A stretch of 64,000 nucleotides of DNA from Klebsormidium nitens. Lineage: Eukaryota; Plantae; Klebsormidiophyceae. Where the stretch lies: NCBI GenBank assembly GCA_000708835.1, contig DF237142.1:88537-152536 (forward strand), written 5' to 3'. Shown here piece after piece: positions 39,047 to 64,000 of the stretch. Below the pieces are notes generated by a model. The model was not told the DNA's origin, made no database searches, and saw nothing but the letters and a program-made list of their open reading frames with translations. The stretch's first letter is position 1; every line of letters begins with the position of its first letter. A program made the translations under genes and the position numbers.

Positions 39047-41197
39047 CTTCTCACTGCAAAGAGTCTTGGCGTCAGAAATGCACTTGGGGTACCTTATGTT
39101 GATCAAGCGCTTGAGATCGGGAGATGTTGCCAGTCTGGTCTTGGGGCCGCACACGCATCGGCTGTGTGCCCTTCGTAGTAAGCTGCGGCTACCACACCTC
39201 GTGGGGGACGATCGGTGGATTCAAAGAAGGCCCACTTGTAGAGAAGACGGGTCGTCCGAATGGGTCCTTCGAAGTGGGGCTGTCTTTGACGGACCTGCTG
39301 TTAGTGTTTCTTCTTGTATAAAGACGTTTTTCTATGCTTTTGTAAAGCTTTATTATTACCCATCTCCTTTCAAAGCCAAACATCTTGTGTGATTCCAGAC
39401 ATGCGGCTGATATTGCATATCATCGGTTGGTATGACTGCCACCGATCCGACGGTGTGCGCGACACGAAGAACTCAGAGTGATTTGCTAGGTTTCCTGTGG
39501 CATGGCCAGTCATAGGAAAGCTATGATCGTTCAAGTTTGTTGCAGCGCTCAATAACGGCTAGATGATCATCTCCACGTCGTGCATACGTATGCTCACTAG
39601 ACAACAATTGCAGGACAATGAAATCATGCTTAAGGGGTCTCAACTTTGAACATGCCGGTCAATGCAATTGCATGATTTGGTGTTCAGCTTGTGCCAAGTG
39701 ACGTTGCTAGAGCTTAACTACTCAACTTTCAAGCTTTTGGTAGTTATGTCGACTCAGGTTGAAAGCGCGCGGGTTACGGTATGGGTTACGGTATGGACTC
39801 TGCAAATGAATGGCATGACGAATCCCTTGAACTATGACTCTGAGCTTAGATCATGCACCGAGCTCGAGCTAGCCGTCCAACCTCAGGCCATTTGCGCACT
39901 GAGTCCAGTGGTCGGCATGCAATAATTTAAGGCGGCACGCGCCGGTCACTTCATATATGTCAAGCTGCATGAGGTGATAATGTTGTAAATATGTCTGGTG
40001 CTAAGATCGACATCCTACAAGTCCGGTCTGGCTCGAGGCATACACGTGTGCTGCATGATGCAGTTTCTCTCAAATACGCCTTATAGCCAATAAGGCCATA
40101 TAGGCGCTTCTCATGGCACACAAATGTTTTGGAGTGTTCAAGTGAGTTAGTACGCCAGCTAAAATCGATGATTACACTACCTACCCTATTAGGATATAGA
40201 GATGCAGATGCCGGCAGCCTCACATTCACCGCGCAAGCTAGGGATTATATTCCACTTAAACAGTCGACATGAGAAGGCCAATCAAATTGTTCTATCTGTC
40301 AGATTCTCTATTTTCAGTGTATGCACGCTAGACTGCTCCTTATTTGAGAGACAGCTATCACTTCTTCAAGATCGTGAGAGCATCCGCGAATCAAGCCTAC
40401 ATATGCGGCTAGGCGCGTTCACTGGATTAGCATGGCCCGGCGCCGGGCGCTCTGGGGATGGTCAGCACCGCGTATGCAACCGCAGCCTATGATAATGCAA
40501 TGTCCAAGTGGATTCTTGGTGAGATGTCGAGCTGCAGCAGAGAATAAGCTCCTGGAATTCATCTGACCGCCCCAAATACGGTCTGTAAAGTCCACCAATA
40601 TAAGTCATCAACCAAAGTGGAGGCTCACCAAGTTGAGCCCCTCTCACGAACTCCTGATCTCAAGGATGGCATGGATGACCACATGGCCAGCACACTCCGG
40701 TATTGCCGGTCACTACGACCGTTCTCTAATATAGAAACTCCACCTACCCAAGCTTTCTGATCATACCGTACTACAAAACACACTGTTACCTATGCTCGCC
40801 GAAGCTCTGCAACCACTGCCTCCCCGCACGAGCTCAAGCTTTGACGCCGAAAGCCTTTGACGTCGCAACAGGACGGCTCTACCTCTATGGCAACACTGAC
40901 GTCAGCTAATCAAGACGAAACAGGCGCCCTTCCGATCGGCAAAGGTAGAGTACACAACGCTAACCGCTGTTTCCTAAGTCTGCTGACGCCATTTTCAGAG
41001 TCTGCTGGCGCGGAATAACTCTCAATTTAGTGTTGGGTTAGGCTACGTTACACTGCATCAGTTCCCCGGGCTCATATAAACAACATCCTTAACCCAACGG
41101 CAACATGCTCCGTACCGTACCCACCCGAAACCCCCATCCCATCCGAATCGACGTAGCGGGTTTCAACGTAAAATCAGTATCGTGCCTGGCGTGGCAA

Positions 41198-44100
41198 CTA
41201 GTGCGGCGTGCGGGCCTTGAATGCTTCCAAGATCCGCATCCGCGCGCCGAGGGGGTGCACGCCCACCTCCTTGAGCTGCTGCAACGTCAGGCGCGACAGC
41301 ACCGCCAACGTCACCTCCTCCTGCCAGCGTGACGGCAGAATGACGTCAGCGAAGAGCAAAACAGTCTCGCGTGCGGACCTCGTTCTGGCAGCGCCGCGAA
41401 CGATGCCGGTCAGCAAGGTTGGCAACACGATCTGAAGTGATAATCAACGGTGGTCATGATAGGCCTCGTGTGACACTTCCTATTTGCCGTGGTAGAACTG
41501 AAAAGCCGGTGGAGGCCGGAGATATAATGGAAATGATCTTAGGTACATCCTTCAATGAATTTCTACGGCGAGGCTTCAAACAGAAGTATGCTGCTCAGGG
41601 TAAGTTGTTAGCGAGACGAGCCATGTATCTGATCTCCGCCAGCTCAAAAGAAACATCCGAAAGACCGACTCGAGATACTGGTGGCAGATGATCAGACAGC
41701 AACCGTGCAGTTTCACGAAGCATGGCCACTGGGAGCAAGGTCGCCCCAGAAGAAGGCAGCCTTAACAGAGTGCTATAATGATCTCCCATCTCAGGGGCAC
41801 ATACTTGCAATCGCACCTTTTCGACAGCTTCTTTTCCACTTCTAAGCAACTTACGAGGGGGGCTGAGATGTTACCAAGGGGCCGACAGACCGGGGTTCCG
41901 CTGTAGCGAGACGGAACCACTTTAAGATAATCGGGCCAACTTTATTATTGTTGGCTTTCATCGCTCTCACCTGCTCCAGCGTGTCCAGGTAATGTCCGAG
42001 CCCGAGTCCCGTCAAGAACCGCGCAATCTCGCCGGGCGCGTCCCTGCCGCCGGCCAAGTGTCCATTTCCGGACGCGTCCGCCAGCCTGGCACCGTTCGCG
42101 CCCCGCGCTTGCAGGTCGTCGCCCTCTGCTGACGTCACCTCGGGCCGATAGCGGTCGAACCCGGGCGCGCCGCCGGTGTACGTGGATTCGAAGCTGGACC
42201 AGCTCCCGCTGCTCACGTCACTGGCCACGTCAGCCCAGCCACCGGGCGGGGCCCGGGCTTCCGAGCGGTCCCTCTCGTACCGCGCAGCGACGCCGTCCTC
42301 GGAGTAGCTGCGCGTAAGCTCGAGCTGCCACGGGAAGCCGGCCACGTGTCGGCCCTGGATTGGAAGGCTGGAAGCCGCTGCGCCGGGGTATGCGGGGTCC
42401 GATGCGAACCGCGACTCCTCTCTCGCCCAGCCGTCGTCGTGCGCGGCAAACTCCGTGAAAGCCATCCTGCCCCGGGGCGAGCGCGACCCCCCGGGGGACG
42501 TCTTCCCGGACGAGTCCCGCGAAGCCTCGTCCAGGGGAATCCCCCGCGCGGGCACTCTCCAGGGACCCCACCCCGCTCCGCGCAGGGGGCTGGCCGACAG
42601 TGAGCGTTGCGCGCGGTCCTGCCCGGAGGGGCTCCCCCGCGAGGACGAGATTGAGGACGTGGAGCCGCGCGGCGTCCCCAGGTGACTCAGCACCTGCTCG
42701 GTGATCGCCTCCGTCAGCCGCTCCAGCGTCGCCGCGTCTAGTTCGACTCCCTCCGCCAGGCGCGGCTTGGCAGGGACCTTGATGCCGCGCGCGGCCGCCA
42801 CGGCGGCCGCGGCCGCGCGCGTTTGCGAGCTGAGCGGGTCCGGAACCGGGCGCTCGGGGGCGCGATGCTCAGGAGAGCGGTCTTGGCTGGACCCCCCGGG
42901 GGAGACTACCGACGTCTTGCGCCGTTGTCCCGGCTGTTGGGCGAGCGCCTCGGCCTTAGTCCGCTGCGCCGGTGAGCCCGTCGGTTGGGGAGGCGGCGCG
43001 CCTGGGGGGCTGTTCCGCTCGGGCAGCCACTGGCTGACGCTGCGGCGATGCGCTGCGTGGGCGGAACTCGTTGCGACGCGCAGCGGAGCTGGAGCGAAGT
43101 CTGTGTACCTACGGGGCGACCTCTCTGGGCTCCTGCTGCCGTCTTTTTTCGCTGTGAGGGGAGCAACCTGCTCGTCGTCGCTACTCACGCCTTGGTCGTT
43201 CGACAGCGTTCCGTTCGCTTCGGTTCCGGTTCCGTTCTCGAGACTCGGCTTAGTAACCACAGGGAACTCTTCTTCGACGTTCGCCATGCTCCTGTCAGCT
43301 AATGGCAACGCCAGTGGCTTGACCTCCTCTTCCAACCGGGTTAAGTTCAGGGGGATCCCCGCAATGTCCGGGCGCGGCTTCAGCGGGCTCGGATCCCGCC
43401 CTGACCACCGGGGCTTTCTACCGGGCTCTCCTACTCTCCCACAAACTTGCTGCTCCACGCCGGGGGGTGCTCGGTCGTCCTGCCCCGGGCGCAGGTGCGA
43501 GAACCCCTTGTCATGTGCCGGGTCTGCAACAGGGCCCCCGACCGGGGGATCCCTCTCCTCCAAAGACGACCGCTTGGACCCTTCCGGCGTCTCGAAAGAC
43601 GGCCGCTTGGAGCCCTCGGGAGTGCCCGAGTTGCTGACGTCACGGCTGTGCGGGTCCGAGAAGCCGCAAGAGGAGGCGGCCAGGCACACCAGCTCCGTGC
43701 GCGACACGCGCGAGTACTGGCGGAGACTTCCGGACGCGCCCAACACGCCGCCGCCGCCAGCCGCGGGGCCCTCGAGGGCCGCCGCCAGGTTGCGTTGCAC
43801 CATCACGGGCAGGCTGCGCGGGGGGGCCTGCGCGGACAAGGTGCCGACAGGCTGACGTCAGCGGCTGGCATGGCAGCAGAGAGGCTCTGAGGGGTGTGTC
43901 CTTCCCAACACAGTCAGCAGAGAAGTGACTAATAAATGGAGCCATTGGACGAGGAACGAAGTGAGACAGAAGTGAGTCACAGCGAAACTGGAAAGGTACG
44001 GAGATCGGAAGATTCAAGCGCACCAAGAAGACATTGGAAGAGACACCGTTTCGGGCGCACGAAGGTGCGCACTATTATCGTACGATGTTTGCTAAAACAG

Positions 44101-47100
44101 GCGATGCTGAAGGGTAGCATGGCGCCGCATCTGCCGCCCGCAGGTTCTTTGATATCAAACCTAATAAACCAAACACGGCGGATATACCTTCTCCGTTGCT
44201 TGTTCCTCCTTTCGCTTCTCCTCCCGCTTGGGTGCCCCGCGGCTGACGTCATCAGTCGACGGTGGACTCTTCTCAGCCGTTGGTTTCGTCGTGTGTGCTT
44301 TGACTTCCGAGTCCTTTGCACTTGGCGTTTCCTTGGCGAGAGACGTCTCCGCCGGGCGCCCAGCACGTTCAGATTCCGCCTTCGTCCGGCTTCCGTCCGC
44401 TGCCGGCACACCCGCGGGCGCCGTGCCTCTCTCCGGCGGCCCCCCGTCCTCGTGCGGACCGTCCAAATCGGATATGATGCTGGTGTCCGACAGCCGCCGG
44501 ACGTAGCTCCCCGGGTCGCTGCCCAGCATCATCTTCAGGTGCTCCATCCGGGTGTCCTTGGCGGCCGGCGGTGCGGCCGCCTTTCCGGCGACCCCGAAGC
44601 CGACAATCGGGGCAGCGGGGTCGCCTTTCGCACCGGATATGGAGGGCGGGCGCTTTAACACCCAGGCCGTCTTGCCGACCTGCACGAACTTGGTGCTGTG
44701 GAGCTCCAGCTTCGGGCTGCCGTCGCTCACGCGCCGCTCGCTCTCACTTACGGGCGTCGACCCCAGGGATCCCCCTGCCGACGTGGACCGCACGCTCGGC
44801 TTCGGGCTCGGCGTCCCGTTTGCGGGTGCCGGAGACATCCCCTCCAGGGAGGGGCTGGACTCGGGGTACGCCGCTTGGAACGCCTCCCGGTTGATGAGCA
44901 CTTTCAGGTCGGGGGACGAGTAGCTGCGCGAGAGGGGGGAGCGGATGCGTGGGGACGCCGGGTGGAGCGGCCCCCCCGGGGGAGTGATGCGCAGGCTCGT
45001 GAAGCGCGCCCGGGCGGACGCGTCCGCGACCGGGGACACCCCCGGCGGCTCATCGGCCGCGAGTTTGGAGCTTGGCTGAGTCCCGGGATCCTGCACCGGG
45101 GGCCTCTTATCCACTTCTTGCCGCAGCGGCGGAACAGGTTCGGAGCTTGCCCGGATCCGGGAGTCGGAAAGCCTGTTTTCTGTTTCGCTCTGGGCCGGCG
45201 CTTTCTCTTCGGCGCTCTTCTCGCCGTCCTCCTTCCCTTTGTCCTCGGGGACGCGTCCCCCGACCGCCATNTCCAGCCACCANCCCGTACTCGCCGACGG
45301 TCCCCGGTCGCGTCCCCGGACCGTCGACGTCGCGGCGCGGACTCCGTGCGCGCGAGCGCGTTTCGNNNNNNNNNNNNNNNNNNNNNNNNNNNNNNNNNNN
45401 NNNNNNNNNNNNNNNNNNNNNNNNNNNNNNNNNNNNNNNNNNNNNNNNNNNNNNNNNNNNNNNNNNNNNNNNNNNNNNNNNNNNNNNNNNNNNNNNNNNN
45501 NNNNNNNNNNNNNNNNNNNNNNNNNNNNNNNNNNNNNNNNNNNNNNNNNNNNNNNNNNNNNNNNNNNNNNNNNNNNNNNNNNNNNNNNNNNNNNNNNNNN
45601 NNNNNNNNNNNNNNNNNNNNNNNNNNNNNNNNNNNNNNNNNNNNNNNNNNNNNNNNNNNNNNNNNNNNNNNNNNNNNNNNNNNNNNNNNNNNNNNNNNNN
45701 NNNNNNNNNNNNNNNNNNNNNNNNNNNNNNNNNNNNNNNNNNNNNNNNNNNNNNNNNNNNNNNNNNNNNNNNNNNNNNNNNNNNNNNNNNNNNNNNNNNN
45801 NNNNNNNNNNNNNNNNNNNNNNNNNNNNNNNNNNNNNNNNNNNNNNNNNNNNNNNNNNNNNNNNNNNNNNNNNNNNNNNNNNNNNNNNNNNNNNNNNNNN
45901 NNNNNNNNNNNNNNNNNNNNNNNNNNNNNNNNTCGGCCCCGGCGAGCGGCGGGCCGACCGGTCGTGCTGAGGCGAGCGGCGGTCGGGGGCCGTCCTTCGG
46001 GGAGGTCGGTGAGAATCGGGCGACCGACCCCGCGCGCTCCAGCGGCGGCGCGGCCGCGGCGTCGGCAAGCAGCGCGCGGTGTGCGAGCTCCCACTCGCCG
46101 TGCTTCAGCAAGTACGTCTCCATGGGGCCCTTGCCCTTGATGTGCCGCCGGGGCACCTGCAAACATGACAGCAAAAACTAAGGGCGCTAGAAAGCCAAAA
46201 AGCCAAAAGTGTTAAATGAAGCGTTGTCGCACAAGTTCTGCGCCGATTTATGCTCAAAATTGTGGAGGCTGCCTTCAGCCTCTGAATAGACTTTACGACC
46301 GGGGAAATGGCCGGAAGAAGTGCTTACTAACGTTTCTTACGCCGACAAGGCCCACCGTAGATCTATAAAATCGCCGCTCGATCAAAGAGTTGTGAAACGG
46401 CGGGCGCACGGCGCAGAAGTCAGGTACCTCGGGCGCATACGCAAACGTCGTACGATCGCTGGTTTTTCTTTTCGGGGGTCCAAGGATTTGAAGTTACAAG
46501 CATCATGCTGCGGCTCACGGTTGCGAAGTCGAAGAGGTGCTTGGTGAGGTCGTGCGTGGCGGGGCTGCAGTGCACGGCCTGCGCGTAGCCGTTGCTCTCC
46601 ATGCGGCTCGCCGTGTTCACCGTGTCGCCGAAGAAGCAGTACCGCGGACACTTGACGCCGATCACGCCTGCGCGGCGCGGCCAAAACCGGGTTAGCAATG
46701 CTCTAACAAGTGAAATTGCTGAAGTGGCGCATGGGAAGAAAGTGTGCCGCAACACTTGACGTCGACCACGCCTGCGCGGCACGGCGGGAAGCTACGTCAA
46801 CAAGAAGGGAGTGCTTGGATAGATTCGACGTATGAGGAGAAAGGATTGTACCGCGGCAAAGTCCACAAAATCAGAGGCAACCCTAAATACTCGAGAAGAC
46901 CGGCAACCCCTACATCAAGAAACCCCCGGGCTCAAAGAATCCAAAAGCTCCGAGGTAACAAAAACCGAGGAGCCGAGACCGCGGCGGCGCACCTGCGTAT
47001 GCTGGCCCGGAGTGCACCCCGATTCGGATGCGCACCGACTCGCGCTGGTTGGGCTGCTTGATGGCGTGCACGAGCGCGAGCATGTCCATCGCCATACGCA

Positions 47101-50100
47101 GAACGCGGCCCGCGTGGTCCGCCGCGCCGTCGTGGCCCGCCACCACCATGTACGCGTCGCCGATCGTCTCCACCTGGCAAGGGTTGAGGGTTTAGAACTT
47201 CGGGATTAGGGATTGGGGTTACGTGAGCATCCTGGGCTTGAAGCGCTATTGTGGCCCGCCAAAAGCCATGTACGCGTGACGATGTTTACGGGGTCAGAGT
47301 TTAGGATTCGAGCTTTCACATAGGGGTCTCAGGAGGTGTCGGAATCTGTCAGTCCAGTTTGAGGATCTGGGGCTGAATGCGTGGTCATGGCCAGCCACCA
47401 CTCTATACGCGTCCCCAAAGCGGACCAACGCCTCCTTGTGCTCGTGTGCTGGGCCCTGATTTCGCCACTAGCGGCGATCAGATTGGCAGGAGCAACCTTA
47501 GTACTCTGCACAACGAGCCTGGGGAAAAAGGTAAGGAGAGCAAGGCGGAAACAAGAACGCAAGAAGATGAAAGGGCGCGGAAGACGCCGTGGTGGCGGGT
47601 GTACCTTGTAGACGCCGTGCTTGTCGACGAGCTCGTCGAAGCCGGTGAACATGTCGTTGAGCATGAAGATGAGGTCAGCCGTGCGCGAGCAGCCCGCGAT
47701 CTCGGTGAAGCCCACGATGTCGCTGAACAGGATCGTCACCTGCGCGCAGCACACGGGCCGGGACGACGATCAGGGGTTCGTCATTCAGAACCATTTCAAA
47801 GATTGTGAACTCAAGGGCGCCGAACGGACGGATACCTGTAACGTTTACTGAAGTAATTAGCGTAGAGAAGGCGAGAAAGCTTGGCCACGCCCTGAAGGGG
47901 CGAGTGACGGTGTGAAGTTCAAATCAGGAGCGCTTAACATTTGATCTTTCAGAAGGAGAAATGCGGTGGAAAGAGCATTTGCGGAGTTGTGAACAGTGAT
48001 CATCTCCGGCCCCAATTGAACGGGGGCCATGTTTTATTCTTAGAAAATAAGAGAAGGTATCACTGTTCACAGGGCGGAAGCCGCTCCTCTCTAAACCTAA
48101 AAGGCGCGACTTGTGCCACAGCAAAGCTTCTGAGCTTTTGTGATTAGCCGGCTGGGGTGCGCGACACGGGCTAGCGAGGACTCGAAATTTCCGACTCAAT
48201 CGCGTCAATGATAGTTACCATCTGAAACCTTAGAAACGCGAATTAAAAGAGGCGAATCAAGAAGAGGAGTCGATGAAAAACGCTCTGCGCCCCGTGCGAG
48301 GAAGTCGGTGTGAGTCTGCGGCCGATATTGGAAGACCGGCTCAATACCGTCTCAGAAACTTTCGTTTCCAATTCGAAGTTGAAGCTGACAGATAGCAAGC
48401 TCCAGCGAACAGAGGTTTGTCTGCTCCACGCGCGCACCTCGGGGTGGGAGTCCGCGATGAGGGACTGGCCCGAGTTGAGGCGGTGGATGATGGACTCGGG
48501 CAGCATCTTCTTGAGCAGCTGGTAGCTCTTGGCGGCCTCCATCTCCACCTTCCACAGCTTCTTGATCTTCAGCTGCGTCTCGATGCGCGCCAAGATCTCC
48601 AGCCGCTTGAACGGCTGTGCAACGAAACCGGCACGCACAGTAAGTAGAGGTGGGACAAGGCTCGAAGCAGAATGTCAGACTGTTCAATAATGGTGACCAA
48701 ACCAGGAATCAAGTAAAAGAACACTGAGCTTGAGGCGCTTTCCCTGCGAGGGTTCGGGCTTTTCGGACGCTCCATTCAGTACTCAAAGCTGCTGTACGTC
48801 GCTAGAACACCATGGTCGTGAAGAATCAGCGACCCAAACTTATGACTCCCTTTCTCCACGAAGCAGCAAAGGCACGCCCGCAAGTCAGACTGGAGTTCCT
48901 GTCGCGACGGGACGCTGGATAAAACAGAGATACCGCGTTCTTTGGCTCGTTCTGCCGCAATGCGGTTCTCTTGCCCCTGCCTCTCGCAAATCACTCCGGA
49001 AGGTTTCAAACGTGTGCATGGCAAAACGCGCGGGATACTCGAGTCCAGTTGGTATTTGCGCGCTTGCCTTGGTGAGGTAGTCGTTGGCCCCCGCCTTGAG
49101 CCCCTCCACGATGTCCCCTTCCTGGCTCTTGGCGCTCACCATGATCACCGGGAGCGCGCTCGCGGGGAACATCTGCCGCACCTTGCGGCACACCTGCAGC
49201 ACGGCACGTGGCAACATCAGCGACGGCCACGCGGCAAACGAAGCCAAGCACTGGGAACGCGGGAACAAGACGTAAAGCTGGTTCAGATTTCGGACGAGTG
49301 TGTTGCACTGAAGCACTTAACTTCCCATAGTGCCTACCTTTCCTCAACCAGGTCTATGTGACATTTGTCGGACAAACGAAAGAATGAAAGGCTTATACAA
49401 AAGTGGCCGCAGACCGACATCCTTTATCACGTTCCGATTCCAGTTACCGTTGCCACATCCCTGACGACTAAAAGCTGGGAGTTCTCCCCGAGAATTCACT
49501 AAAGGTCCCGGGCTTGAGGGTGTCGGGTTCACAAAGTGAAAATATTGAGCAATCTAAAGGTTTAGGGTTCTCGCAGTTCAGGTTTCTGGAATGCTGCGGC
49601 GCGCACCTCGTATCCCGAGATGCCCGGCATCGAAACGGGGCAGAGGGAAAAGGTTAGGGCAAAGGCAAGCTTATGGGTCAGAATTTTAGGTTTTAGGTCA
49701 ACGTTCCCGAGATTAGGCTTCCCTTTCCATGATGTTAACGATAAAGGCGCGCACCTCGTATCCGGAGAGGCCCGGCATCATGACGTCCAGCAGGATGAGG
49801 TCCGGCGTCGTGTCGCTGCGCTCCAGGTACGCCAGCGCCTCCATGCCGTCCATCTTCTTCGTGATCTGCGCCAGCAGGAGCGCACGTGACGTCAGCAGAA
49901 AGGCACAATGACGTCAGTGGAACGGGACCCGGAAGCGCGGCGCAGGAGTTCCCTCGGTGCGGTGCACTAGCGCCAGGGATGAGAATCGAAACGGCTCTCC
50001 AAAATAACCATTGTTAGACTGCAAAGGTCTGCCACGGAGTTTGTTCTCGAAACCGGGCAAGGTCGCAGAAAACTCCGCAACTGGTTGCAAATTTACGACG

Positions 50101-53100
50101 AATCCTGTAAATCTCTCTTCAACATGTTCCTTCAACTGTACTCTCAACGAATTACGTGTCGCTTCAAAAAGTATTCTTCTGAGTATCTGTTCAGCGGATC
50201 TCTTCCACGTATCTCTTCAAACCATCTCTTCAACGTATCTCTTCAAACAATCTCTTCAAAATAATTCTTCAAAGTATGTCTTCAAAGCTCCACCACGCTC
50301 CCAGCAGCAGTTGCGACCTCTTTTCGTGCCGTCACCTTGTACGCCGCGGGCCGCAGCATGCCCTCGACGACCATTTGGTTGACCGGGTCGTCGTCCACCG
50401 ACAGGATCTCGTACTGCCCGTTCACGTCGAAGAACGACCGGTGCAGCCGCCCCGCGCCGTCCTCGAACCCCTCGCTCGCGCAGTGCCCCGTGATCTGCGA
50501 GACACGCGGGAGGAAGCGAATGCATGAATTTGCGAGGTCGCAATGGCTCCGAGGAGTCCGCCGACTTCTGTAAATACACGGAGCTTTGCGGCTTTCGAAT
50601 GCGTTCGACGGTTCTACCTAACTAAGCAGCGGAGACCGCATGAGAGAAATGGCTTTTGAACCAAGGCAGCACTTTTCCAGATCTCAGACTCCCAAAGAAC
50701 AAGTCTACATCTCGCCGAATGGTGCGTATGGTGCGAAAGTCTCGCTCTCGATGCAATCTAGACGTCATCGAGGCTATCTCGTTTCGCGCGCCGCGGCCGC
50801 CCCGCGCGCACCTGTTGCTTGAGCGTGTAGCCCGACGCGGACTCGCGCTGGAACTTGGTGAGCGAGCTGCGCGCGAACTTGGGCGCCGCCTCGCCGTCCG
50901 ACGCCGCCGAGTCCGCGCTGCTGCTCGCGCGCTCGCGCCGATCCGCCTCGCGCTGCGGGGAGGGCGCGCTCGGCGGGCGCGAGCGCGAGGGCTCAGGCTC
51001 CTCGGGGGCGCTCTCTTCCTTTTCGCGCTTGGGCTGCGGAAAATAAAAGCGGAAACGGGTGTGAAAGAGGCTTCGAGCGAAATGAGAGGAATCAGAGAAG
51101 TAAACGAAGGAAAACTCGAAGGCTTGCCAAGCCTGGAGGGTGATCAAGCAATCTTCCCGCAGGATTTCAACGTACGTAATCTCCGGGCGCTTCAAAAGCC
51201 AATCTGAAAAGATTGAACCATGAAACCAGGAGCAAACTGCTTGCCGCCTGGTTCACGGGCAAGGGAACCTCCGTCAGTTTACTTGCTAACTGTACGGTTA
51301 GCGAGGGGCGCGAGCGGCGTTACCTGCACGAGCGGCAGCACGAAAGTGAAGGCGGACCCCTCGCCGAGGCGTGACGTCACGGAGATGGAGCCGTGGTGCG
51401 CGCGCACGAGCGTCTCCGCGAGGGACAGCCCGAGGCCCGTGCCGCCGTGCTGCTGCACGATCGCGTCGCTGCCCTGCTCGAACGCGCTGAAGATATCGGC
51501 GATGCGCTCCGCGGGGATGCCGATGCCTGCCGACAAGGCGAAGGGAGAGATGCGGCATTATGTACCTCAGAGAGTTCGAGCAAGTTTGCCCAAAAGAAAC
51601 GTTGCCTGCCAGGAGAGAGGGGGGATAGAACCTGATAAGCGGCCGCAACTCGCTTAGGAGAGATGCCGATGTCTGCAAGCATAAGAGGTGCGGGCACAGA
51701 AGAATCATTGATGACCCAAAGTGGAACGAGGGCGCAGAGAGGGTTCAACAACGGCAGACGTATATCAGGTACGGCACACGATGGCCGCTTTCTGAATGTG
51801 CTGACTCCGTCGCAACCTCGTGGTCGCACCGGGCAGGAACTCTTTGCTTTCCGCAGGATCATGAGCCAGTGTTGAGCACGGAATCACGCGCGGCGACTTC
51901 ACCGAGGCCGCTCAAGAAAAGACTGCTCTTTGAAGATCTCTTCCTGTGACTGACCCCTCGCTTCCTCGCCGCCAGGAGCTACAGCGTCATTCGGCATTTT
52001 GGGTGTGCATCTGAACTCACACCCATCAACACATGCAGCCACGCGACGTGGCTCCGCCCGAGTTGGTTATCCGAGGACTCTGCACGCGCGCTCACCGGTG
52101 TCTTTGACGGTGACGGCCACGACGTCCTGCCCGGTCTGGTTCTTGCGCAGCCGCGCGCTCACGCGGATCTCGCCTGCACCGCCGACAGCGCGCGCACGAT
52201 CAGACTCAGCGGTTTAAAGATTGCAGAGCCGGAAAACATCACGATCTCTTCGTACTACAGCTTGGGAAGTAAGTTAGGTCGTTTTCCGCAAAGGAATCCA
52301 AGCATTCGCAACCCGGTGCCGAAGCGGCAAGGTTCCCTGCAGTGCATCACGATGAAGATTGCTGCAGGCATGGGCGCTCAAGGAAAGATTACTGTGCAAG
52401 AATGTGCAGCGGCGCGCTTCTCTCATATCCATCACGACGACCCCGGAATTGAAACAAGAATGGCTCTCCGCTCAAGTACTTATCTGCTTCTGAACGTGAG
52501 CTTTTGGCTCGACGACTCATCATAAACGACACTGATTAGGTCTGAGTCGTATGGCCGGAAGTGCACTCAACAGCGCAGGTGACGATGCTCAGGTGTCGGG
52601 GTTGACACGGACAAAAGAAGTCCGCTTAGCCTCGGAAAAATCAAACCCCTCAATCAGGTTGAGGAGTTTTGAACACTTGTTTTGGGTCCGTGCCTTCAGG
52701 TTTCAGAGCGGGGCGTGCGTGGGAGTGCGCTGACCTTCGTCGGTGAACTTGGCTGCGTTGCCCACTATGTTGTGCAGCACCTGGATCAGCCGCGCCGGGT
52801 CGCACTGCAGCTCCGGCAAACCCGCCGGCACGTCGTTGTGCAGCTGCAAGCAGGCGAGAGCGGGCGGCTGGGAACAGCACTGGGCGGAAAGTACACGTGG
52901 GCACAGTTGACGACTAAGAGTCTTCATAGAACGGTTTTGAACAGCCGCTTCGAAGGTCGAGTCAAGAGACATTCCTGTGTGTGTACTGAGAAGACCCCGT
53001 CACGACCAGATGCCAAAGTGCAACTATAGGTAGGAAGCTTCACGCTTACACAGCACCGCCGTGAGGCGTGGAAGCCATAACTTTGTTATCTATACTTTCA

Positions 53101-56100
53101 AGCCTTGCAGCTGATTTTGCAGCTGGTTTTGGGACTCAAGGCGCCCCAATCAAACCCTCGGTATCCTTTTTCAAACACCAACCACCTCTACTAGGGCGGG
53201 GGGTAAAGGGCAGGACTATTAAGGGACACAGTGGCGTGCAAGGCAGGTGATTCGCAAGTTCCGTTCTCCTGGTTTCCGTTCCGGCGCGCACCTTGACGGA
53301 CCACTTGAGCGACGGCGTGGTGAGGTCCAGCACGTGGTCCACGCACGGCCGCAGCTTCACGCGGTCGTACCGCAGCACCAGCGGGCCGCTGCGCGCGCTG
53401 CTCACGTCCAGAATGTCTGCGCGCCAGCAAAGCGGAGCGAACGTCAGGCTTACGGTCTCCTTCCTCTCTGATCAACCGGCTGGAACGTGCTGCCATGAAA
53501 AGGCTTCTCGAATTGCTCCAGACGGTCAAAGGTCTGGAGATGCAAGTCCTCGACCGGTGCTGCCGTCTCGTGTGCACCTCAAAGCCGGGACGATGGGCGC
53601 TGGGCGCTGACAGCGTTGGGGATAGCTGGACTCTGCGTCAAAGCTGCACTAGGCTTGCCGCACTATCTGGCCGCTTTTGTATTTTCGGAACTCATTTCGA
53701 CCGTTCTCTTGCGAGGGTGTCCGTGTGAGCCAGATACCGGGATTGCCCTCAAACAGTCCGCTGACCGAGAATGTGTGCGCAGCTCCCGCAATCGCCTCCT
53801 TTCACATCTCTGCTGCCCAACAGTCACTCCGCGAGCCGTGCTTGAGAGCCCGCATACACCACACCCATGAGAAAAGCCAACCAGCTTCCGTGCCCTGGCG
53901 ATCCGCTTGTTTCCGCTGCCGTTCCGGTGCGGGTGGCTCACCGTTGACGAGGTTCTGCAGTCGGTGCCCGCTCTTTTTGATGGTCCCCAGCGTGTGCAAC
54001 AGCACCTCCGTCACCGGCCCGCACGACCCCTGCACAACCCACCCGCGCCGTCAGCACAGTTCCAACCATGAGGGACACAGGTAAAAGCGTCCTCTCCTAC
54101 GCCGTAACTGATTCAGGCGCTCTCTACTGTACCACTTCCGGCGCCTTTCGCGCTCGATGGGAGCTGGACCCATCAAGTGCGTCACGCCAACCTCTGTCTT
54201 CAGTGTTCCAAAGCCTCCGATCGTCATCTGTTTGCGCCTCGCGATACGAAGCTAGTGTTCGCGCACAATCCCTCGTGTAGCCGAATTGTTCCGTACCCTG
54301 TCCGGTCAATCTCACAACACACTCGCGCGCGCGCGTTACCTGCAGGACGGTGTCGGAGAGGCCGATGATGCCGTTGAGCGGCGTGCGCAGCTCGTGCGAG
54401 ACGGAGGCGAGGAAGCGGTCCTTCTGGCTGACCGCCTGCCGCAGCTCCGCGATCAGCGCGTTCTTGCTGTTCTCCTCCTGCACCGCGGCCGCCGCGCGCC
54501 GCTTCTCCTCGATGCTCAAAAAACTGCCCTCCAGCAGCAGCGCGCTGAACACCACCTGGCAATACAAGAAGGGGAGGAAAAGGGCGTCGCGGCAGGCTCG
54601 CCGGGTGGAGAAGAGCAGGGCCGGAAGGGAAGACGGACGGAGGCGCGAGGGAGTCGCACGAACAAAGGAGAAACCAGAAAGACGGCGGACATACGTTCAG
54701 ACACCACTAAGCGGCGGTGTTTGAAGTCGGGGCCAGCCTCGCAGCTCTTCGCCGCTTTCGATAGCGGAAAGCCTCTTGAAAGAAGGACGCATTTCCAATG
54801 GAAGGGAGTCGCTCTTCACACAGTTCCAGGATTCTGTGATTTTGTCCTTGTGTAGAAGAACATCTCAAGAGATCGTTGCGAATATGTTGGAAACCATTAT
54901 CTGGGTTGCACTGGGCCGTTTGTAGCTGGGATTGCATAATCTCTGCCTTTTACTGGGTTCCTGGTAAGCTGCACCGCAGCAAGCAGTGCCGGCTCCAGAC
55001 GCTGACCTTGGCGGAGAGGTCGCCTGCGAGGTAGAGGTACGCCTCGGTCTCGGGCGTGATGACGTGGAGCGCGGAGAGGGCCCACACGAGCGGGAAGATG
55101 TTCCACGTGAACACCATGTGCGCCTGCAGGAACTGCAGGTTGCGGTAGCTCGCCAGGTCGCGCGCCTGCGGAGGAGCGAAGGGACACCGAATCAGTGGCC
55201 GTACGCAAACGAACGACGGAGCGGCGCCGAGAGGCCGTTCCGTATCAGCGCTGATTGGACGCGAACAAGAGTGGAGTCAATTTTGGCTAGATATGGCCTT
55301 GAAAGGTTCGACTTGGCATCTAAAATCTCTGCAAAACGTGTGCGGGCTCAAGCCGCCAGCAAACACTACCCTCAGCAACAGCCGTCAGCCCTCCTCCCTG
55401 GGTTCGGCCATCGATCCCAGTAACCTGAAAAGTACGGCCGTCCGAACCAGCAAGGAGCAATTCGTGCGCCAAACAAGGCGTGCCGTGCTTGTCAACAAAG
55501 TATGCGCGGGAAAAGCTCGCCACTGAGACTTCCTACTAACTGGAACGTCCCCGAAAAGCGCCAAGAGCATTTGCATTTGTGTCTGGCTGGGGCGTTGCTG
55601 GCGCACCTCGCGCAGCGCGCTGCGGAACATGTTCCACACGAGGACGAGCACCGCGAGGAACGCGGCGCAGGAGCACGAGATGGCGGCGGCCATGACGGGC
55701 CACGACGGCGCCAGCGACGCGGTCAGGCCGGTGGCCAGCATCAGCATGTCGTACAAGACAGCCACGACCACCTGCCGGGCAATGGGGAACTGGGGTTTAG
55801 TGACGGCACAAGACGGCAGAGGAAGCGGTACCGGGGGTGTCAGGATCCGGGTGGGGGTGACGTCATGGTGAGGGGCACTGAGGGTGAGACGACGAGAAGC
55901 AACGGGTGGAAGGTTGTCGTAAGCTCGTCCCAGCCGATCCCTGACATGCCCGGGCATCCGAACGGGGGATGGTCACCCCGGCAGCAGGAGGGGGATCATC
56001 CACACCGTGCTCGCCCGACAGAAGCCTGCCCGTAAGAGTGAGTAAGGGCAGACCAGGAACGGCGACAAGAAGCGCCACGTGAATCTTGCAGAAGGGCGAA

Positions 56101-57838
56101 GAGTGAGGAGCGCCCGGGACGAGTGGCACCCTGTTCCCCTGACGGGGCAATCGTGTCAGCGACCATGTGGGCGAGCGTGATCTGCGGGCCGGCGCGCAGC
56201 TGACCTGGGGGCTGGTGAAGGAGGAGATCTTGGCGGCCATGAAGATCATGGTGGGCGTCGTGTGCAGCCACTGCACGTAGCGCACCGGGAAGCAGGGCCG
56301 GCCAAAGAAGTCGAGGACAACGGGCGTGGCGGAGTAATACAGCAGCATGTTGGTGCTGAATGCGATTGCGTTAATGTAACACACCAGGAACGCCTGCGCA
56401 CGACAGCCGCGACGAGTCAGCACAGCAGCAGCTTACGCTCACTCAGATCTTGATCTGCCCTTGCTGGCGGCAAAGCCCGGAGTCTGCTGAGTGGCGATCT
56501 AATGAGAGAAGGCTGCTTACCGCGGTTCTCTTCTCCTTGTCGGTGCGGCAGATGAGGGAACACGTGAACAGGATGAATGCGCAGCCGAAGGCGACCATGC
56601 CCACCTGCGGGGGCAAGGAAGGATACCGTTTGTTATAAGAGCATGGCAGGAAAGATCTTCTTTTGAAGCGTGTGCTGGAAGCTTCTTTCCAGTGGGGCCG
56701 AGCTACTGCCTCATTCGCGGACCGGTCACTTCCTTGGGCCGCACTGCCGCTTACTGCTTCGTTACTGCTGCTGCCAAAGACATCTTGCAAGCCCTGTGAG
56801 GTGCCACAAAGTGTCGGCCTCTGGCCTCAGTAAGCCCGCAGCAGTGACCGGCTTAGCTACAGCATGCCTGGCCCTCCTCTCATTGACAGGTGCTCAGATG
56901 AGCGAGCTACTTCCGAGCTTCTTCCAAAGGCGTTTTGTGATCTCTGCATCCACTGACGTTTACCCCCTAAGTCTCATAGCCACCCCCTGTGAGAAGAATG
57001 GGGGATTCTGACCTCAGTAGAGTGGCGCGTTGGGTCGAAGGGCGCTTGTCTGCCGGCTGGCGGGTGCCACTGGCGCAGCAGCAGCACCAGGACTGCAAAC
57101 GTAGCCACCAGTGCGCTCACGCTCGATGCGATCAGCCAGGTGCGGGGCGGCTTGCGCAGCGAGCGCTCCTGCGCAGAACAAGGTAGGCATGAGCTTTTGG
57201 GACAGTTCTCGATGCAGCTGAGGATTGGAGGAGAAGGCGGTCTCGGAAGCTCAGCAGTCCAGCTTTCCTGATCCTGGGTTCTGACTACGCAACATGAGGG
57301 TAATCTACCCAAAGGTATGCAAGGAGCCCTCCCCAAGCAGGCTGGGGTCTTCAGCAGGCTGACAAGCCCGCGAGCTAGTCCTTCTACTGGGCATGGAAAC
57401 GCGTCGTGCGTTTATTGACCACAGGAAGCTGGGCTGTCCCGAGCTCGCATCTGCCACGCAGTGTGCCCTGATTGCCAAAGACCAATTGCAGTTCACACAA
57501 CACTTGCTGTAACTAGTAGCCCCAGCCCTGCCCTGCCCCTGCCTCCACCATGTGACCCCTCATCCTGCACCACAGTCTACCTCCCGTTAAGTCTTTTGCC
57601 CCTGCTGTTCCTGCTTGACCCTCAGCTCCCAGCCGGCGTGGTCCTGCGCTGCCCCACATCTGAACCTGCCTGTCCCTGCCCCCTGCTGCTGCCTGCCCCT
57701 CACCGAGTCTAGCAGCTCCAGCAGTTGCGGGACAGCGCCGCGCGGCACCGGCACCACTGGCGAAGGCGGCCCTTCCTTTTCCCCCTCCTGCGCTGCGGGT
57801 GGGCCCCCCGGCGGCGTGCTGGGGACCTCGTCAGCCAT
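41198..57838 (-). CDS. Histidine-kinase rhodopsin / two-component cyclase opsin: 8-TM rhodopsin - HisKA - HATPase - receiver - guanylyl-type class III cyclase - long low-complexity tail - SAM
   Basis: Exons 57838-57704, 57168-57013, 56604-56521, 56393-56205, 55771-55607, 55165-55007, 54555-54340, 54029-53942, 53416-53292, 52843-52735, 52173-52096, 51526-51324, 51033-50812, 50494-50336, 49865-49755, 49193-49068, 48614-48438, 47739-47605, 47173-46993, 46667-46519, 46156-44188 (spans N gap), 43827-41971, 41320-41198. The first 20 exons total 2967 nt in frame. Motifs: [106 protein letters not shown]; [44 protein letters not shown]. Confidence 0.93.
45366..45932. other. Assembly gap (567 N); single Ns also at 45271 and 45283
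   Basis: Run of n in the sequence. Confidence 1.
50198..50288. repeat. 13-bp tandem minisatellite (ATCTCTTCAANNN x7) in a receiver-domain intron
   Basis: Units start at 50198, 50211, 50224, 50237, 50250, 50263 and 50276. Confidence 0.9.
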
Positions 57839-63956: not shown

Positions 63957-64000
63957 CGATTACGACTGGTTACGCCTAACCTCGTTCTCGACAGGATTTC

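What the first reader, a model, noticed from the sequence alone, without database searches (positions are those of the whole stretch)
41198..57838. Light-sensing two-component cyclase: rhodopsin-HK-receiver-guanylyl cyclase-SAM in one ~2300-aa protein in a probable streptophyte alga
Seen: stitching 23 exons gives a type-1 opsin fused to a complete His-to-Asp relay and a class III cyclase. The relay has an H-box SHELRTP, N box, G boxes, receiver Asp in LLDVMMP and Lys in TKPF. Established: this architecture defines chlorophyte HKR/2c-Cyclop proteins (Chlamydomonas COP5/COP6, Volvox VOP6), where COP6/VOP6 are ATP-dependent, light-inhibited guanylyl cyclases; land plants lack microbial rhodopsins. 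Inference: this is a self-contained light-to-cGMP module retained on the lineage leading to land plants. It is invisible in the ORF track because short exons fragment it. Modular rhodopsins have been catalogued from algal genomes, so this locus may already be listed; the SAM-tailed variant and its function are the open question.
Basis: partly seen in the sequence, partly recalled or inferred. Interest (0 to 1): 0.9.

Follow-up and report, generated by a model that had tools for sequence, protein, structure and literature searches.

The report
Klebsormidium rhodopsin–kinase–cyclase gene KnRh1
This is a real, expressed 23-exon gene for a light sensor fused to a histidine kinase, a receiver, a guanylyl cyclase and a SAM tail, but it is the already annotated and catalogued Klebsormidium nitens gene KnRh1, so it is a known kind of photoreceptor whose function is still untested.

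Summary
On the minus strand, 57838 to 41198, 23 GT/GC-AG exons encode in order an opsin with a predicted extra N-terminal helix, HisKA, HATPase_c, a receiver, a class III cyclase, a tail of about 1,050 aa with no Pfam domain, and a SAM domain. The protein is about 2,120 aa, not 2,300.

RNA contigs from four runs confirm nine introns, from the G-box exon to the last cyclase exon. They run 2.3 to 4 kb further 3' past the gap.

The 567-N gap is overestimated. Two related genomes have one open exon there, and only about 15 to 30 nt are missing. Both flanks of the gap carry indel errors that shift the frame.

The gene is not new. It matches GAQ84541.1 / kfl00193_0190, listed as KnRh1 (Rh-HisK-RR-Cyc-SAM) by Awasthi et al. 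2020, down to residue numbers and an X at the window's single Ns. The SAM tail is ordinary for this family (Cop5-8, Vop5, KnRh2, many trebouxiophytes).

All catalytic residues are intact, and the cyclase specificity pair is Glu/Cys (guanylyl). A quick tree places the gene beside the COP6/2c-Cyclop clade, not with COP5.

New here are two likely corrections to the deposited model: a false intron over the gap, and a 37-aa insert inside the SAM domain.

No functional test was found in the papers searched. Interest is low to moderate.

The parts
57704..57838 (-). Exon 1: start codon at 57838-57836, cytosolic N-terminus (aa 1-45)
   Evidence: This is the first ATG after an in-frame stop. The donor is GTGAGG. 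It matches the N-terminus of the published KnRh1 sequence.
57013..57168 (-). Exon 2: extra N-terminal hydrophobic helix 'TM0' (aa about 54-80)
   Evidence: AG/GT flanks. The hydropathy scan finds a hydrophobic segment. The exon is conserved in rel1 and rel2.
56521..56604 (-). Exon 3: opsin helix A
   Evidence: AG/GT flanks are conserved in both relatives.
56205..56393 (-). Exon 4: opsin helices B-C, with R163, Q166 (BR D85 position), T170, T171, M177
   Evidence: Pfam Bac_rhodopsin 39-86. The residue numbers equal those in the KnRh1 table of PMC7693036.
55607..55771 (-). Exon 5: opsin helices D-E
   Evidence: Pfam Bac_rhodopsin 102-165, E 1.9e-7. Splice sites are conserved.
55007..55165 (-). 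Exon 6: opsin helices F-G up to D292 and the retinal lysine K296 (last codon of the exon)
   Evidence: Pfam Bac_rhodopsin 172-211. Residue positions.
54340..54555 (-). Exon 7: rest of helix G, coiled coil, and the H box SHELRTP (His350, Thr354). One exon carries both opsin and kinase sequence.
   Evidence: Pfam HisKA, E 8e-10. Translation.
53942..54029 (-). Exon 8: DHp second helix
   Evidence: In rel1 this exon is fused to exon 7, so that intron is lost there.
53292..53416 (-). Exon 9: kinase linker to the CA domain
   Evidence: The phase-1 join gives NDILDVSS, as in the published model.
52735..52843 (-). Exon 10: N box ([11 protein letters not shown], Asn464)
   Evidence: Weak Pfam HATPase_c hit. 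Alignment.
52096..52173 (-). Exon 11: CA domain up to the G1 box (Asp500)
   Evidence: 100% nucleotide identity to rel1. Residue position.
51324..51526 (-). Exon 12: G1, F and G2 boxes (GGTGLGL)
   Evidence: Pfam HATPase_c, E 1e-15. The RNA loose end at 51037 reads into this exon.
50812..51033 (-). Exon 13: charged linker between kinase and receiver
   Evidence: RNA contigs cover it and join it to exons 12 and 14. The acceptor was set to 51033.
50336..50494 (-). Exon 14: receiver start, acidic pair D677/D678
   Evidence: RNA joints 50812|50494 and 50336|49865.
49755..49865 (-). Exon 15: receiver phospho-acceptor Asp723 (LLDVMMP)
   Evidence: Pfam Response_reg. RNA joints.
49068..49193 (-). Exon 16: receiver Ser753 and Lys775, followed by a GC-AG intron
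   Evidence: Pfam Response_reg. The RNA joint 49068|48614 has GC..AG ends.
48438..48614 (-). Exon 17: coiled-coil / cyclase-transducer helix between receiver and cyclase
   Evidence: RNA joints. Alignment with COP6.
47605..47739 (-). Exon 18: cyclase, metal-binding Asp841
   Evidence: Pfam Guanylate_cyc 10-54. RNA joints.
46993..47173 (-). Exon 19: cyclase, Glu881 (specificity), Asp885 (metal), Arg929
   Evidence: Pfam Guanylate_cyc 55-114. RNA joints.
46519..46667 (-). Exon 20: cyclase, Cys950 (specificity), Asn957, Arg961
   Evidence: Pfam Guanylate_cyc 115-140. RNA joints.
44188..46156 (-). Exon 21: end of the cyclase (Lys998) and first part of the tail. A single exon that contains the assembly gap.
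   Evidence: The acceptor at 46156 is confirmed by RNA. rel1 and rel2 have uninterrupted ORFs of 1,400 and 1,411 aa from exon 3 through this exon. The donor is GTATAT at 44187.
45271..46022 (.). Untrustworthy assembly zone: a 567-N run (45366-45932), single Ns at 45271 and 45283, and indel-ridden flanks
   Evidence: RNA contigs lack the window's letters at 46017 and 46022 and stop matching at 46000. No RNA lies on 45284-45365. The flank reads as the RNA sequence with inserted bases. Only 29 nt of rel1 separate the two aligned flanks.
41971..43827 (-). Exon 22: tail (619 aa, no Pfam domain) ending in the first half of the SAM domain
   Evidence: The frame is open, and the exon is conserved in rel1 (74% aa identity, dN/dS 0.42) and in rel2. 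No Pfam hit was found.
41198..41320 (-). Exon 23: second half of the SAM domain and stop codon (TAG 41200-41198)
   Evidence: Pfam SAM_1/SAM_2. AG is at the same place in rel1 and rel2, with stops upstream in frame. It aligns without gaps to the SAM domains of homologues.
41321..41431 (-). In-frame 111-nt extension used by the deposited gene model (acceptor at 41431). Probably intron, or a minor isoform.
   Evidence: It is not conserved as coding sequence in rel1 or rel2. No homologue has the 37-aa insert. Its words are absent from RNA runs X10 and X13, which hold the exons, but present in four runs of another study.
40601..41197 (-). Probable 3' UTR
   Evidence: It is conserved with rel1 at about 75%. 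The length of RNA contig X6 (3,960 nt beyond 46000) would end near here. This is an inference.

Best explanation
The locus is the Klebsormidium nitens gene kfl00193_0190 (GenBank protein GAQ84541.1). It was catalogued in 2020 as the modular rhodopsin KnRh1.

It encodes one polypeptide of about 2,120 aa with these parts in order:
- a type-1 opsin with a predicted extra N-terminal helix (8 TM)
- a histidine kinase (DHp + CA)
- a short charged linker
- a receiver domain
- a coiled-coil transducer
- a class III cyclase
- a fast-evolving tail of about 1,050 aa
- a C-terminal SAM domain

The mechanism is inferred from the tested relative Cr2c-Cyclop1 (COP6). The kinase autophosphorylates His350 with ATP. 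It passes the phosphoryl group to Asp723 of the receiver. The phosphorylated receiver switches on the dimeric cyclase, which makes cGMP (specificity pair Glu881/Cys950). Retinal bound at Lys296 lets light change the kinase or phosphotransfer step.

The sign of the light effect and the colour are not known. The opsin has Gln at the BR-85 position like COP6, but keeps Asp at BR-212 like COP5 and COP7. The SAM domain most likely mediates self-association or docking. That role is an inference and has not been tested in any family member.
For: Shown:
- Domain order by Pfam on exon pieces.
- A chain of 23 exons with no stop, GT/GC-AG introns, and the same splice positions in two orthologous loci.
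- Spliced RNA contigs in four runs from three studies confirm nine introns, from the exon 12/13 join to the exon 20/21 join. They continue 2,257 nt (X5) and 3,960 nt (X6) beyond position 46000, which is long enough to reach the stop codon and the 3' UTR.
- Exon 7 encodes both the end of opsin helix G and the H-box histidine.
- Identity with KnRh1: N- and C-terminal sequence, 'WWLXMAVGG' with X at the window's single N, and residue numbers Q166, T170, T171, M177, D292, K296 equal to the paper's table.
- All catalytic residues of opsin, kinase, receiver and cyclase are present and align with COP6, whereas COP5's cyclase is degenerate.
- Purifying selection against rel1: dN/dS 0.06-0.36 in the domains and 0.4-0.5 in the tail and SAM.
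- In a quick ML tree, KnRh1, two orthologues and KnRh2 form one clade. That clade is sister to the COP6 + trebouxiophyte clade and lies outside the COP5 clade.

From the literature: COP6 and VOP6 are ATP-dependent, light-inhibited guanylyl cyclases that need the Lys, His, G-box Gly and Asp residues. They have 8 TM helices and long C-terminal sections of unknown function (PMC6284317).
Against: - No RNA was laid on exons 1-11, so the opsin-kinase join rests on exon 7, on conservation and on homology. The only RNA hint there is that the share of words held fits transcription of all exons.
- The sequence across the gap is not known for this strain beyond 30 nt of RNA.
- I could not see where the long RNA contigs end.
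- No biochemical data exist for KnRh1 in the papers searched.
- The opsin counter-ion pattern differs from COP6 (Asp rather than Asn at BR-212). Light could therefore activate, inhibit or switch the enzyme.
- The tree is a quick search, with 81% support for the sister relation.
Confidence: 0.8

Rival explanations
1. The locus holds two or three neighbouring genes (opsin-kinase; receiver-cyclase; a SAM protein) that only look fused when exons are stitched.
For: RNA reads were laid only on 45284-51283, so exons 1-11 and 22-23 have no direct junction evidence here. The tool itself warns that a contig across two genes does not prove one transcript.
Against: There is no stop anywhere in the 23-exon chain. 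Phase-compatible splice sites are conserved in two other genomes. One exon carries both opsin helix G and the H box. Spliced contigs of 3.7 and 5.0 kb link the receiver and cyclase exons to 2.3-4 kb of downstream mRNA. The SAM domain is split between exons 22 and 23. The same full architecture occurs in single annotated proteins of many green algae.
Confidence: 0.04
2. The gene is a decaying pseudogene, and the frame change at the gap is real.
For: The window's reading frames differ on the two sides of the N run. Further frame changes lie just after it.
Against: RNA contigs from four runs disagree with the window exactly at the flank. They give a sequence that keeps the frame and aligns without gaps to rel1, rel2 and KnRh2. 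The orthologues have open frames through this exon. dN/dS is below 1 everywhere. The gene is expressed.
Confidence: 0.03
3. The protein is a real single HKR, but the cyclase is not the light-regulated output. It might be constitutive, make cAMP, or be inactive as in COP5, with signalling through phosphotransfer or SAM-mediated partners instead.
For: COP5 has the same layout but showed no cyclase activity (PMC6284317; PMC8006352). No assay exists for KnRh1.
Against: Unlike COP5, KnRh1 keeps both metal aspartates, the Glu/Cys guanine pair, and the Asn, Arg and Lys of active class III cyclases, identical to COP6. The cyclase exons are the most constrained part of the gene, with dN/dS 0.06 against rel1.
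Confidence: 0.13

Closest known systems
KnRh1 (GAQ84541.1, kfl00193_0190) of Klebsormidium nitens, catalogued by Awasthi et al. 2020 (PMC7693036)
   Same: It is the same gene. The sequence, the residue numbering and even the X from the assembly's N agree.
   Different: The deposited model jumps the gap with a false intron ('...LERAG|TGWWLX...'). It probably uses a wrong acceptor that puts 37 aa inside the SAM domain. The paper's extra 'ICP4' and 'Mn104' domains were not found by Pfam in the tail.
Cr2c-Cyclop1 (COP6) and Vc2c-Cyclop1 (VOP6), ATP-dependent light-inhibited guanylyl cyclases (PMC6284317)
   Same: Predicted 8-TM opsin, HK, receiver, active-type guanylyl cyclase and a long C-terminal tail. 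All residues shown essential in COP6 (Lys, His, G-box Gly, Asp) are conserved. Gln sits at BR-85. The two are sister clades in the tree.
   Different: KnRh1 has Asp at BR-212 where COP6 has Asn. The HK-receiver spacer is about 100 aa in KnRh1 against about 500 aa. KnRh1 is from a streptophyte that has no flagella in its vegetative stage. Its activity is untested.
KnRh2 (KFL_004210020, P0100), paralogue in the same genome
   Same: Same architecture including SAM, and the same clade. The cyclase and SAM regions align without gaps.
   Different: KnRh2 is 1,419 aa with a much shorter tail and a longer HK-receiver spacer. It has Glu at BR-212 and Leu at BR-96.
COP5 / HKR1 of Chlamydomonas (bistable UV-A/blue histidine kinase rhodopsin)
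   Same: Opsin-HK-receiver-cyclase-like-SAM layout, with Asp at BR-212.
   Different: COP5 has Met at BR-85 and a degenerate, inactive cyclase. It falls in a different clade.
Fungal rhodopsin-guanylyl cyclase (BeCyclOp / RhGC)
   Same: An 8-TM type-1 opsin that controls a class III guanylyl cyclase through a coiled coil.
   Different: RhGC has no histidine kinase or receiver. Light activates its cyclase directly (PMC6284317). KnRh1 has the full His-Asp relay between opsin and cyclase.

Membership tests
HKR / 2c-Cyclop (two-component cyclase opsins) | Type-1 opsin with a retinal lysine in helix G | tested here: met
   Three exon pieces hit Bac_rhodopsin. K296 lies in the DLSAK motif and R163 in RYVQW.
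HKR / 2c-Cyclop (two-component cyclase opsins) | Extra N-terminal transmembrane helix (8 TM, cytosolic N-terminus) | tested here: inconclusive
   The hydropathy scan finds a hydrophobic segment at aa 54-80, ahead of helices A-G. Topology was not tested.
HKR / 2c-Cyclop (two-component cyclase opsins) | Histidine kinase directly after the opsin, with H, N, G1, F and G2 boxes | tested here: met
   Pfam HisKA and HATPase_c. His350, Thr354, Asn464, DTGIGI and GGTGLGL align with COP6.
HKR / 2c-Cyclop (two-component cyclase opsins) | Receiver domain with an acidic pair, phospho-Asp, Ser/Thr and Lys | tested here: met
   D677/D678, D723, S753, K775.
HKR / 2c-Cyclop (two-component cyclase opsins) | Class III cyclase with a full catalytic set and the Glu/Cys guanine-specifying pair | tested here: met
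   D841, D885, E881, C950, R929, N957, R961, K998, identical to COP6 in the alignment.
HKR / 2c-Cyclop (two-component cyclase opsins) | All modules on one polypeptide | tested here: met
   The 23-exon frame is open. Spliced RNA contigs run from exon 12 to beyond exon 21. Exon 7 is shared by opsin and kinase. Exons 1-11 and 22-23 lack direct RNA junction evidence here.
HKR / 2c-Cyclop (two-component cyclase opsins) | Groups with tested 2c-Cyclops in a tree | tested here: met
   In the quick ML tree the Klebsormidium clade is sister to the COP6 + trebouxiophyte clade (81). Together with one unnamed sequence they form a starred group (95) that excludes COP5.
HKR / 2c-Cyclop (two-component cyclase opsins) | ATP-dependent guanylyl cyclase activity that is inhibited by light | not testable with these tools
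   This needs expression and a cGMP assay. No such data for KnRh1 were found.
SAM domain (PF00536 / PF07647) | Five-helix SAM fold of about 65 aa at the C-terminus | tested here: met
   The last exon hits SAM_1 (E 1.7e-4, just under the gathering score) and SAM_2 (20.7 bits, cut-off 20.5) over profile positions 26-63. With the 41320 acceptor the whole domain aligns without gaps to Pfam-positive SAM domains of KnRh2, Myrmecia, Trebouxia and Chlamydomonas homologues.
Fungal RhGC / CyclOp (direct opsin-cyclase fusion) | Opsin joined to the cyclase by a coiled coil only, with no two-component relay | tested here: not met
   A complete kinase and receiver lie between the opsin and the cyclase.

The most novel reading that the evidence does not exclude
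KnRh1 could be a working light-regulated guanylyl cyclase whose photochemistry differs from COP6. The combination of Gln at BR-85 and Asp at BR-212 is that of the untested COP7/VOP7 type. It might therefore be activated by light, or switched between two stable states, instead of simply being inhibited. It would act in a terrestrial streptophyte that has no flagella in its vegetative stage. That would give the first natural cGMP photoreceptor on the plant side of the green lineage, and a natural counterpart to the engineered switch-Cyclop.
Probability: 0.15. Interest if true: 0.55.

Novelty: already known. Interest (0 to 1): 0.25.

Why it matters
The gene shows that the two-component cyclase opsin, including its SAM tail, predates the split between chlorophytes and streptophytes and survives in Klebsormidium. 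That point is already in the literature (PMC7693036). What remains open is biochemical. No streptophyte HKR has been assayed, and the role of the SAM domain and of the roughly 1,000-aa tail is unknown in every member of the family. The practical gain here is a better gene model for anyone who clones it. The gap is a short stretch inside one exon, the deposited protein carries a false junction there, and it probably has a spurious 37-aa insert in its SAM domain.

Tried and rejected
- **Reads across the gap and SAM exons:** I therefore laid 45284-51283 and have no direct junction evidence for exons 21/22/23.
- **Transcript-derived proteins:** I tried to recover proteins derived from this strain's transcripts. 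The 668-aa exon query found only the two orthologues. The long RNA contigs would give ORFs outside the search tool's length window.
- **Deposited protein:** GAQ84541.1 never appeared in any protein search, although KnRh2 did. Identity therefore rests on the sequence printed in a paper's supplement, which is machine-read and has small OCR errors.
- **Last-exon extension:** the word search for the 111-nt extension had only 6 sampled words and gave a mixed answer.
- **Acceptor ladder:** I tested whether the two last-exon acceptors are a duplicated 'acceptor ladder' like those noted elsewhere in this genome. No direct repeat was found.
- **Tail domains:** Pfam found nothing in the tail exons. I therefore do not adopt the ICP4/Mn104 labels of the 2020 catalogue.
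- **Not done:** structure prediction, because it would not change the verdict.

Full report
**1. What is in the sequence**

Stop-to-stop frames on the minus strand between 57838 and 41198 contain a series of short conserved pieces. Scanned one by one against Pfam, they hit in collinear order:
- Bac_rhodopsin (profile positions 39-86, 102-165, 172-211)
- HisKA
- HATPase_c
- Response_reg
- Guanylate_cyc (10-54, 55-114, 115-140)
- SAM_1/SAM_2

**2. Related loci**

The 668-aa open exon near the 3' end found two relatives. Their contigs are a Logan assembly (SRR23617307 contig 57920, 'rel1') and a JGI metagenome contig (3300060284 Ga0590114_0001055, 'rel2'). Both carry the same series from opsin to SAM in the same order.

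Nucleotide comparison leaves only the exons aligned, at 77-100% identity to rel1 and 70-93% to rel2. This delimited the exons. Nearly all splice sites sit at the same positions with AG/GT flanks in all three genomes. In rel1 the intron between exons 7 and 8 is absent.

**3. Gene model**

Enumerating phase-compatible GT/GC-AG pairs next to the conserved blocks gave a chain of 23 exons with no stop.

The protein is about 2,117 aa. That figure uses a 47-residue placeholder over the gap, sized from rel1, and the 41320 acceptor. With the deposited acceptor it is 2,154 aa.

Exon 6 ends with the retinal lysine. Exon 7 begins with the rest of helix G and also holds the H-box histidine. The opsin and the kinase therefore cannot be separate genes.

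**4. RNA evidence**

RNA runs of the same organism hold 16-28% of the sampled words of 46201-56200. That fits the exon share of about 19-24%.

Logan contigs of four RNA runs from three studies were laid on 45284-51283. They show eight spliced joints exactly at the predicted sites: 50812|50494, 50336|49865, 49755|49193, 49068|48614 (a GC-AG intron), 48438|47739, 47605|47173, 46993|46667 and 46519|46156. A loose end reads from exon 13 into exon 12.

One contig of 5,024 nt extends 3,960 nt beyond position 46000, and one of 3,671 nt extends 2,257 nt. The predicted remaining coding sequence is about 3.3 kb. The longer contig is therefore long enough to reach the stop and a 3' UTR ending near 40600, where conservation with rel1 also ends. 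That last step is an inference from lengths, because I could not see the contig sequence.

**5. The gap (tested first, as asked)**

All four RNA runs lack the window's letters at 46017 and 46022. They stop matching the window at 46000, 67 nt before the N run. No RNA lies on the 82 nt just after it.

The 30 nt of RNA that follow 46000 are the window's own flank without five inserted bases. They match rel1.

With the RNA correction, the protein reads '...LERAGSVPILTDLPKEAPTALLK'. This aligns without gaps to rel1, rel2 and the paralogue KnRh2.

In rel1 only 29 nt lie between the parts aligned to the two flanks. Both relatives have uninterrupted ORFs of 1,400 and 1,411 aa from exon 3 through this exon.

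The conclusions are:
- The letters on the two sides belong to one continuous exon.
- The 567 Ns stand for roughly 15-30 nt.
- The apparent frame change comes from indel errors in both flanks, about 46022 to 45271. It is not a real break.

**6. Identity**

A paper search led to Awasthi et al. 2020 (PMC7693036). It lists KnRh1 and KnRh2 of Klebsormidium nitens as rhodopsins coupled to HisK, RR, Cyc and SAM.

Its supplement prints KnRh1 = GAQ84541.1 = kfl00193_0190_v1.1. That sequence matches this gene at the N-terminus, through the domains and at the C-terminus. It even contains 'WWLXMAVGG', with an X where the window has a single N.

The paper's table gives KnRh1 residues Q166, T170, T171, M177, D292, L276, E284 and K296. 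My model gives the same numbers for the six I computed (Q166, T170, T171, M177, D292, K296).

The window is therefore K. nitens NIES-2285. I found no functional study of it.

**7. Two likely faults in the deposited model**

First, it bridges the gap with a false intron ('...PPLERAG|TGWWLX...'). This drops the true sequence seen in RNA and in the relatives.

Second, its last exon starts at 41431, which puts 37 aa inside the SAM domain. The evidence against that acceptor is:
- The acceptor at 41320 has AG at the same place in rel1 and rel2.
- The stretch upstream is unconserved and contains in-frame stops in both relatives.
- It has a CTGAC branch-point-like motif at -29, as do five other introns of the gene.
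- With 41320 the SAM domain aligns without gaps to those of KnRh2 and chlorophyte homologues.

Word search of the 111-nt extension was mixed. Two RNA runs that hold the exons lack it, and four runs of another study hold it. It may therefore be a retained intron or a minor isoform.

**8. Function by residues**

- Opsin: R163, Q166 (BR-85), T170, T171, M177 (BR-96), D292 (BR-212), K296.
- Kinase: His350, Thr354, the N box with Asn464, the G1 box with Asp500, and G2 GGTGLGL.
- Receiver: D677/D678, D723, S753, K775.
- Cyclase: metal Asp841 and Asp885, specificity Glu881 and Cys950, Arg929, Asn957, Arg961, Lys998.

All align with COP6, whereas the COP5 cyclase lacks them.

Glu/Cys is the guanylyl-cyclase pair by established knowledge of class III cyclases. 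COP6 and VOP6 are ATP-dependent, light-inhibited guanylyl cyclases that need the Lys, His, G-box Gly and Asp. They have 8 TM helices and long C-terminal parts of unknown function (PMC6284317).

A hydropathy scan finds an extra N-terminal hydrophobic segment at aa 54-80.

The opsin pattern Q/T/T/M/D/K is closest to the untested COP7/VOP7 type. It differs from COP6 at BR-212. The direction and colour of light control are therefore open.

**9. Selection and phylogeny**

Against rel1, dN/dS values are:

| Region | dN/dS |
|---|---|
| Opsin | 0.15 |
| Kinase | 0.36 |
| Receiver and coiled coil | 0.15 |
| Cyclase | 0.06 |
| Tail and SAM | 0.41-0.50 |

The tail is a fast-evolving but maintained coding region.

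A quick ML tree of 36 sequences (1,020 columns) puts KnRh1, rel1, rel2 and KnRh2 in one clade with 100% support. That clade is sister (81%) to the clade of COP6-type Chlamydomonadales and trebouxiophyte Rh-HK-RR-Cyc-SAM proteins. The COP5 clade lies outside. This fits vertical descent from the common ancestor of green algae and plants, which is an inference.

**10. The SAM tail and the 'lineage to land plants'**

SAM-tailed members are common. Examples are Myrmecia, Trebouxia, Apatococcus, Symbiochloris, Haematococcus, C. eustigma, C. incerta and C. schloesseri, plus Cop5-8 and Vop5 by the catalogue.

Among named hits in two family searches, the only streptophyte was K. nitens. Those searches were capped at 8,000 candidates and limited by length, so absence elsewhere is weak evidence.

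**11. Surroundings**

About 2.7 kb upstream of the start, at 60578-64000 on the plus strand, lies a Ty3/gypsy-type retrotransposon with gag, protease, reverse transcriptase and RNase H. No Pfam domain was found in the larger ORFs of 30-41 kb.

**Verdict**

It is already known as KnRh1, and its SAM tail is normal for the family. The remaining value is a corrected gene model and an untested protein.

Noticed in passing
window 60578-64000 (+): A Ty3/gypsy-type LTR retrotransposon lies about 2.7 kb upstream of the gene's start. Its ORFs hit Retrotrans_gag/zf-CCHC, aspartyl protease + RVT_1, and RT_RNaseH. It runs off the end of the window.
   Followed up: partly
L003 4845-5148 (rel1) versus window 54555-53942: The 310-nt intron between exons 7 and 8 of the window gene is missing in the close relative rel1, where the two exons are contiguous. 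rel2 keeps an intron there. This is a recent intron loss or gain within the Klebsormidium-like group.
   Followed up: partly
window 49067-48615 (-): A GC-AG intron is confirmed by RNA joints in four runs. rel1 also has GC at this donor, while rel2 has GT.
   Followed up: yes
window 49438-49656, 50046-50365, 50501-50806: Low-depth RNA contigs (2.5-7.7, against 13-68 for the spliced contigs) lie inside introns 13 to 15. This suggests pre-mRNA or some intron retention in these libraries.
   Followed up: no
window 43850-43862 and 41340-41352 (-); L001 equivalents: The palindrome CTGACGTCA sits 29-34 nt upstream of the acceptors of exons 22, 23 and 15, and is conserved in rel1 at exons 22 and 23. 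CTGAC lies 25-34 nt upstream of the acceptor in 6 of 22 introns. This is a likely branch-point consensus in this genome.
   Followed up: partly
protein databases: The deposited protein of this gene (GAQ84541.1) never came back from the protein searches, although its paralogue KnRh2 (KFL_004210020) did.
   Followed up: no
P0099 and P0177 (JGI contigs of 7.1 and 6.6 kb): Two long Rh-HK-RR-cyclase proteins (1,692 aa with SAM; 2,082 aa) come from unnamed environmental contigs. P0099 branches at the base of the Klebsormidium + COP6 group and could mark a further lineage that carries this family.
   Followed up: no
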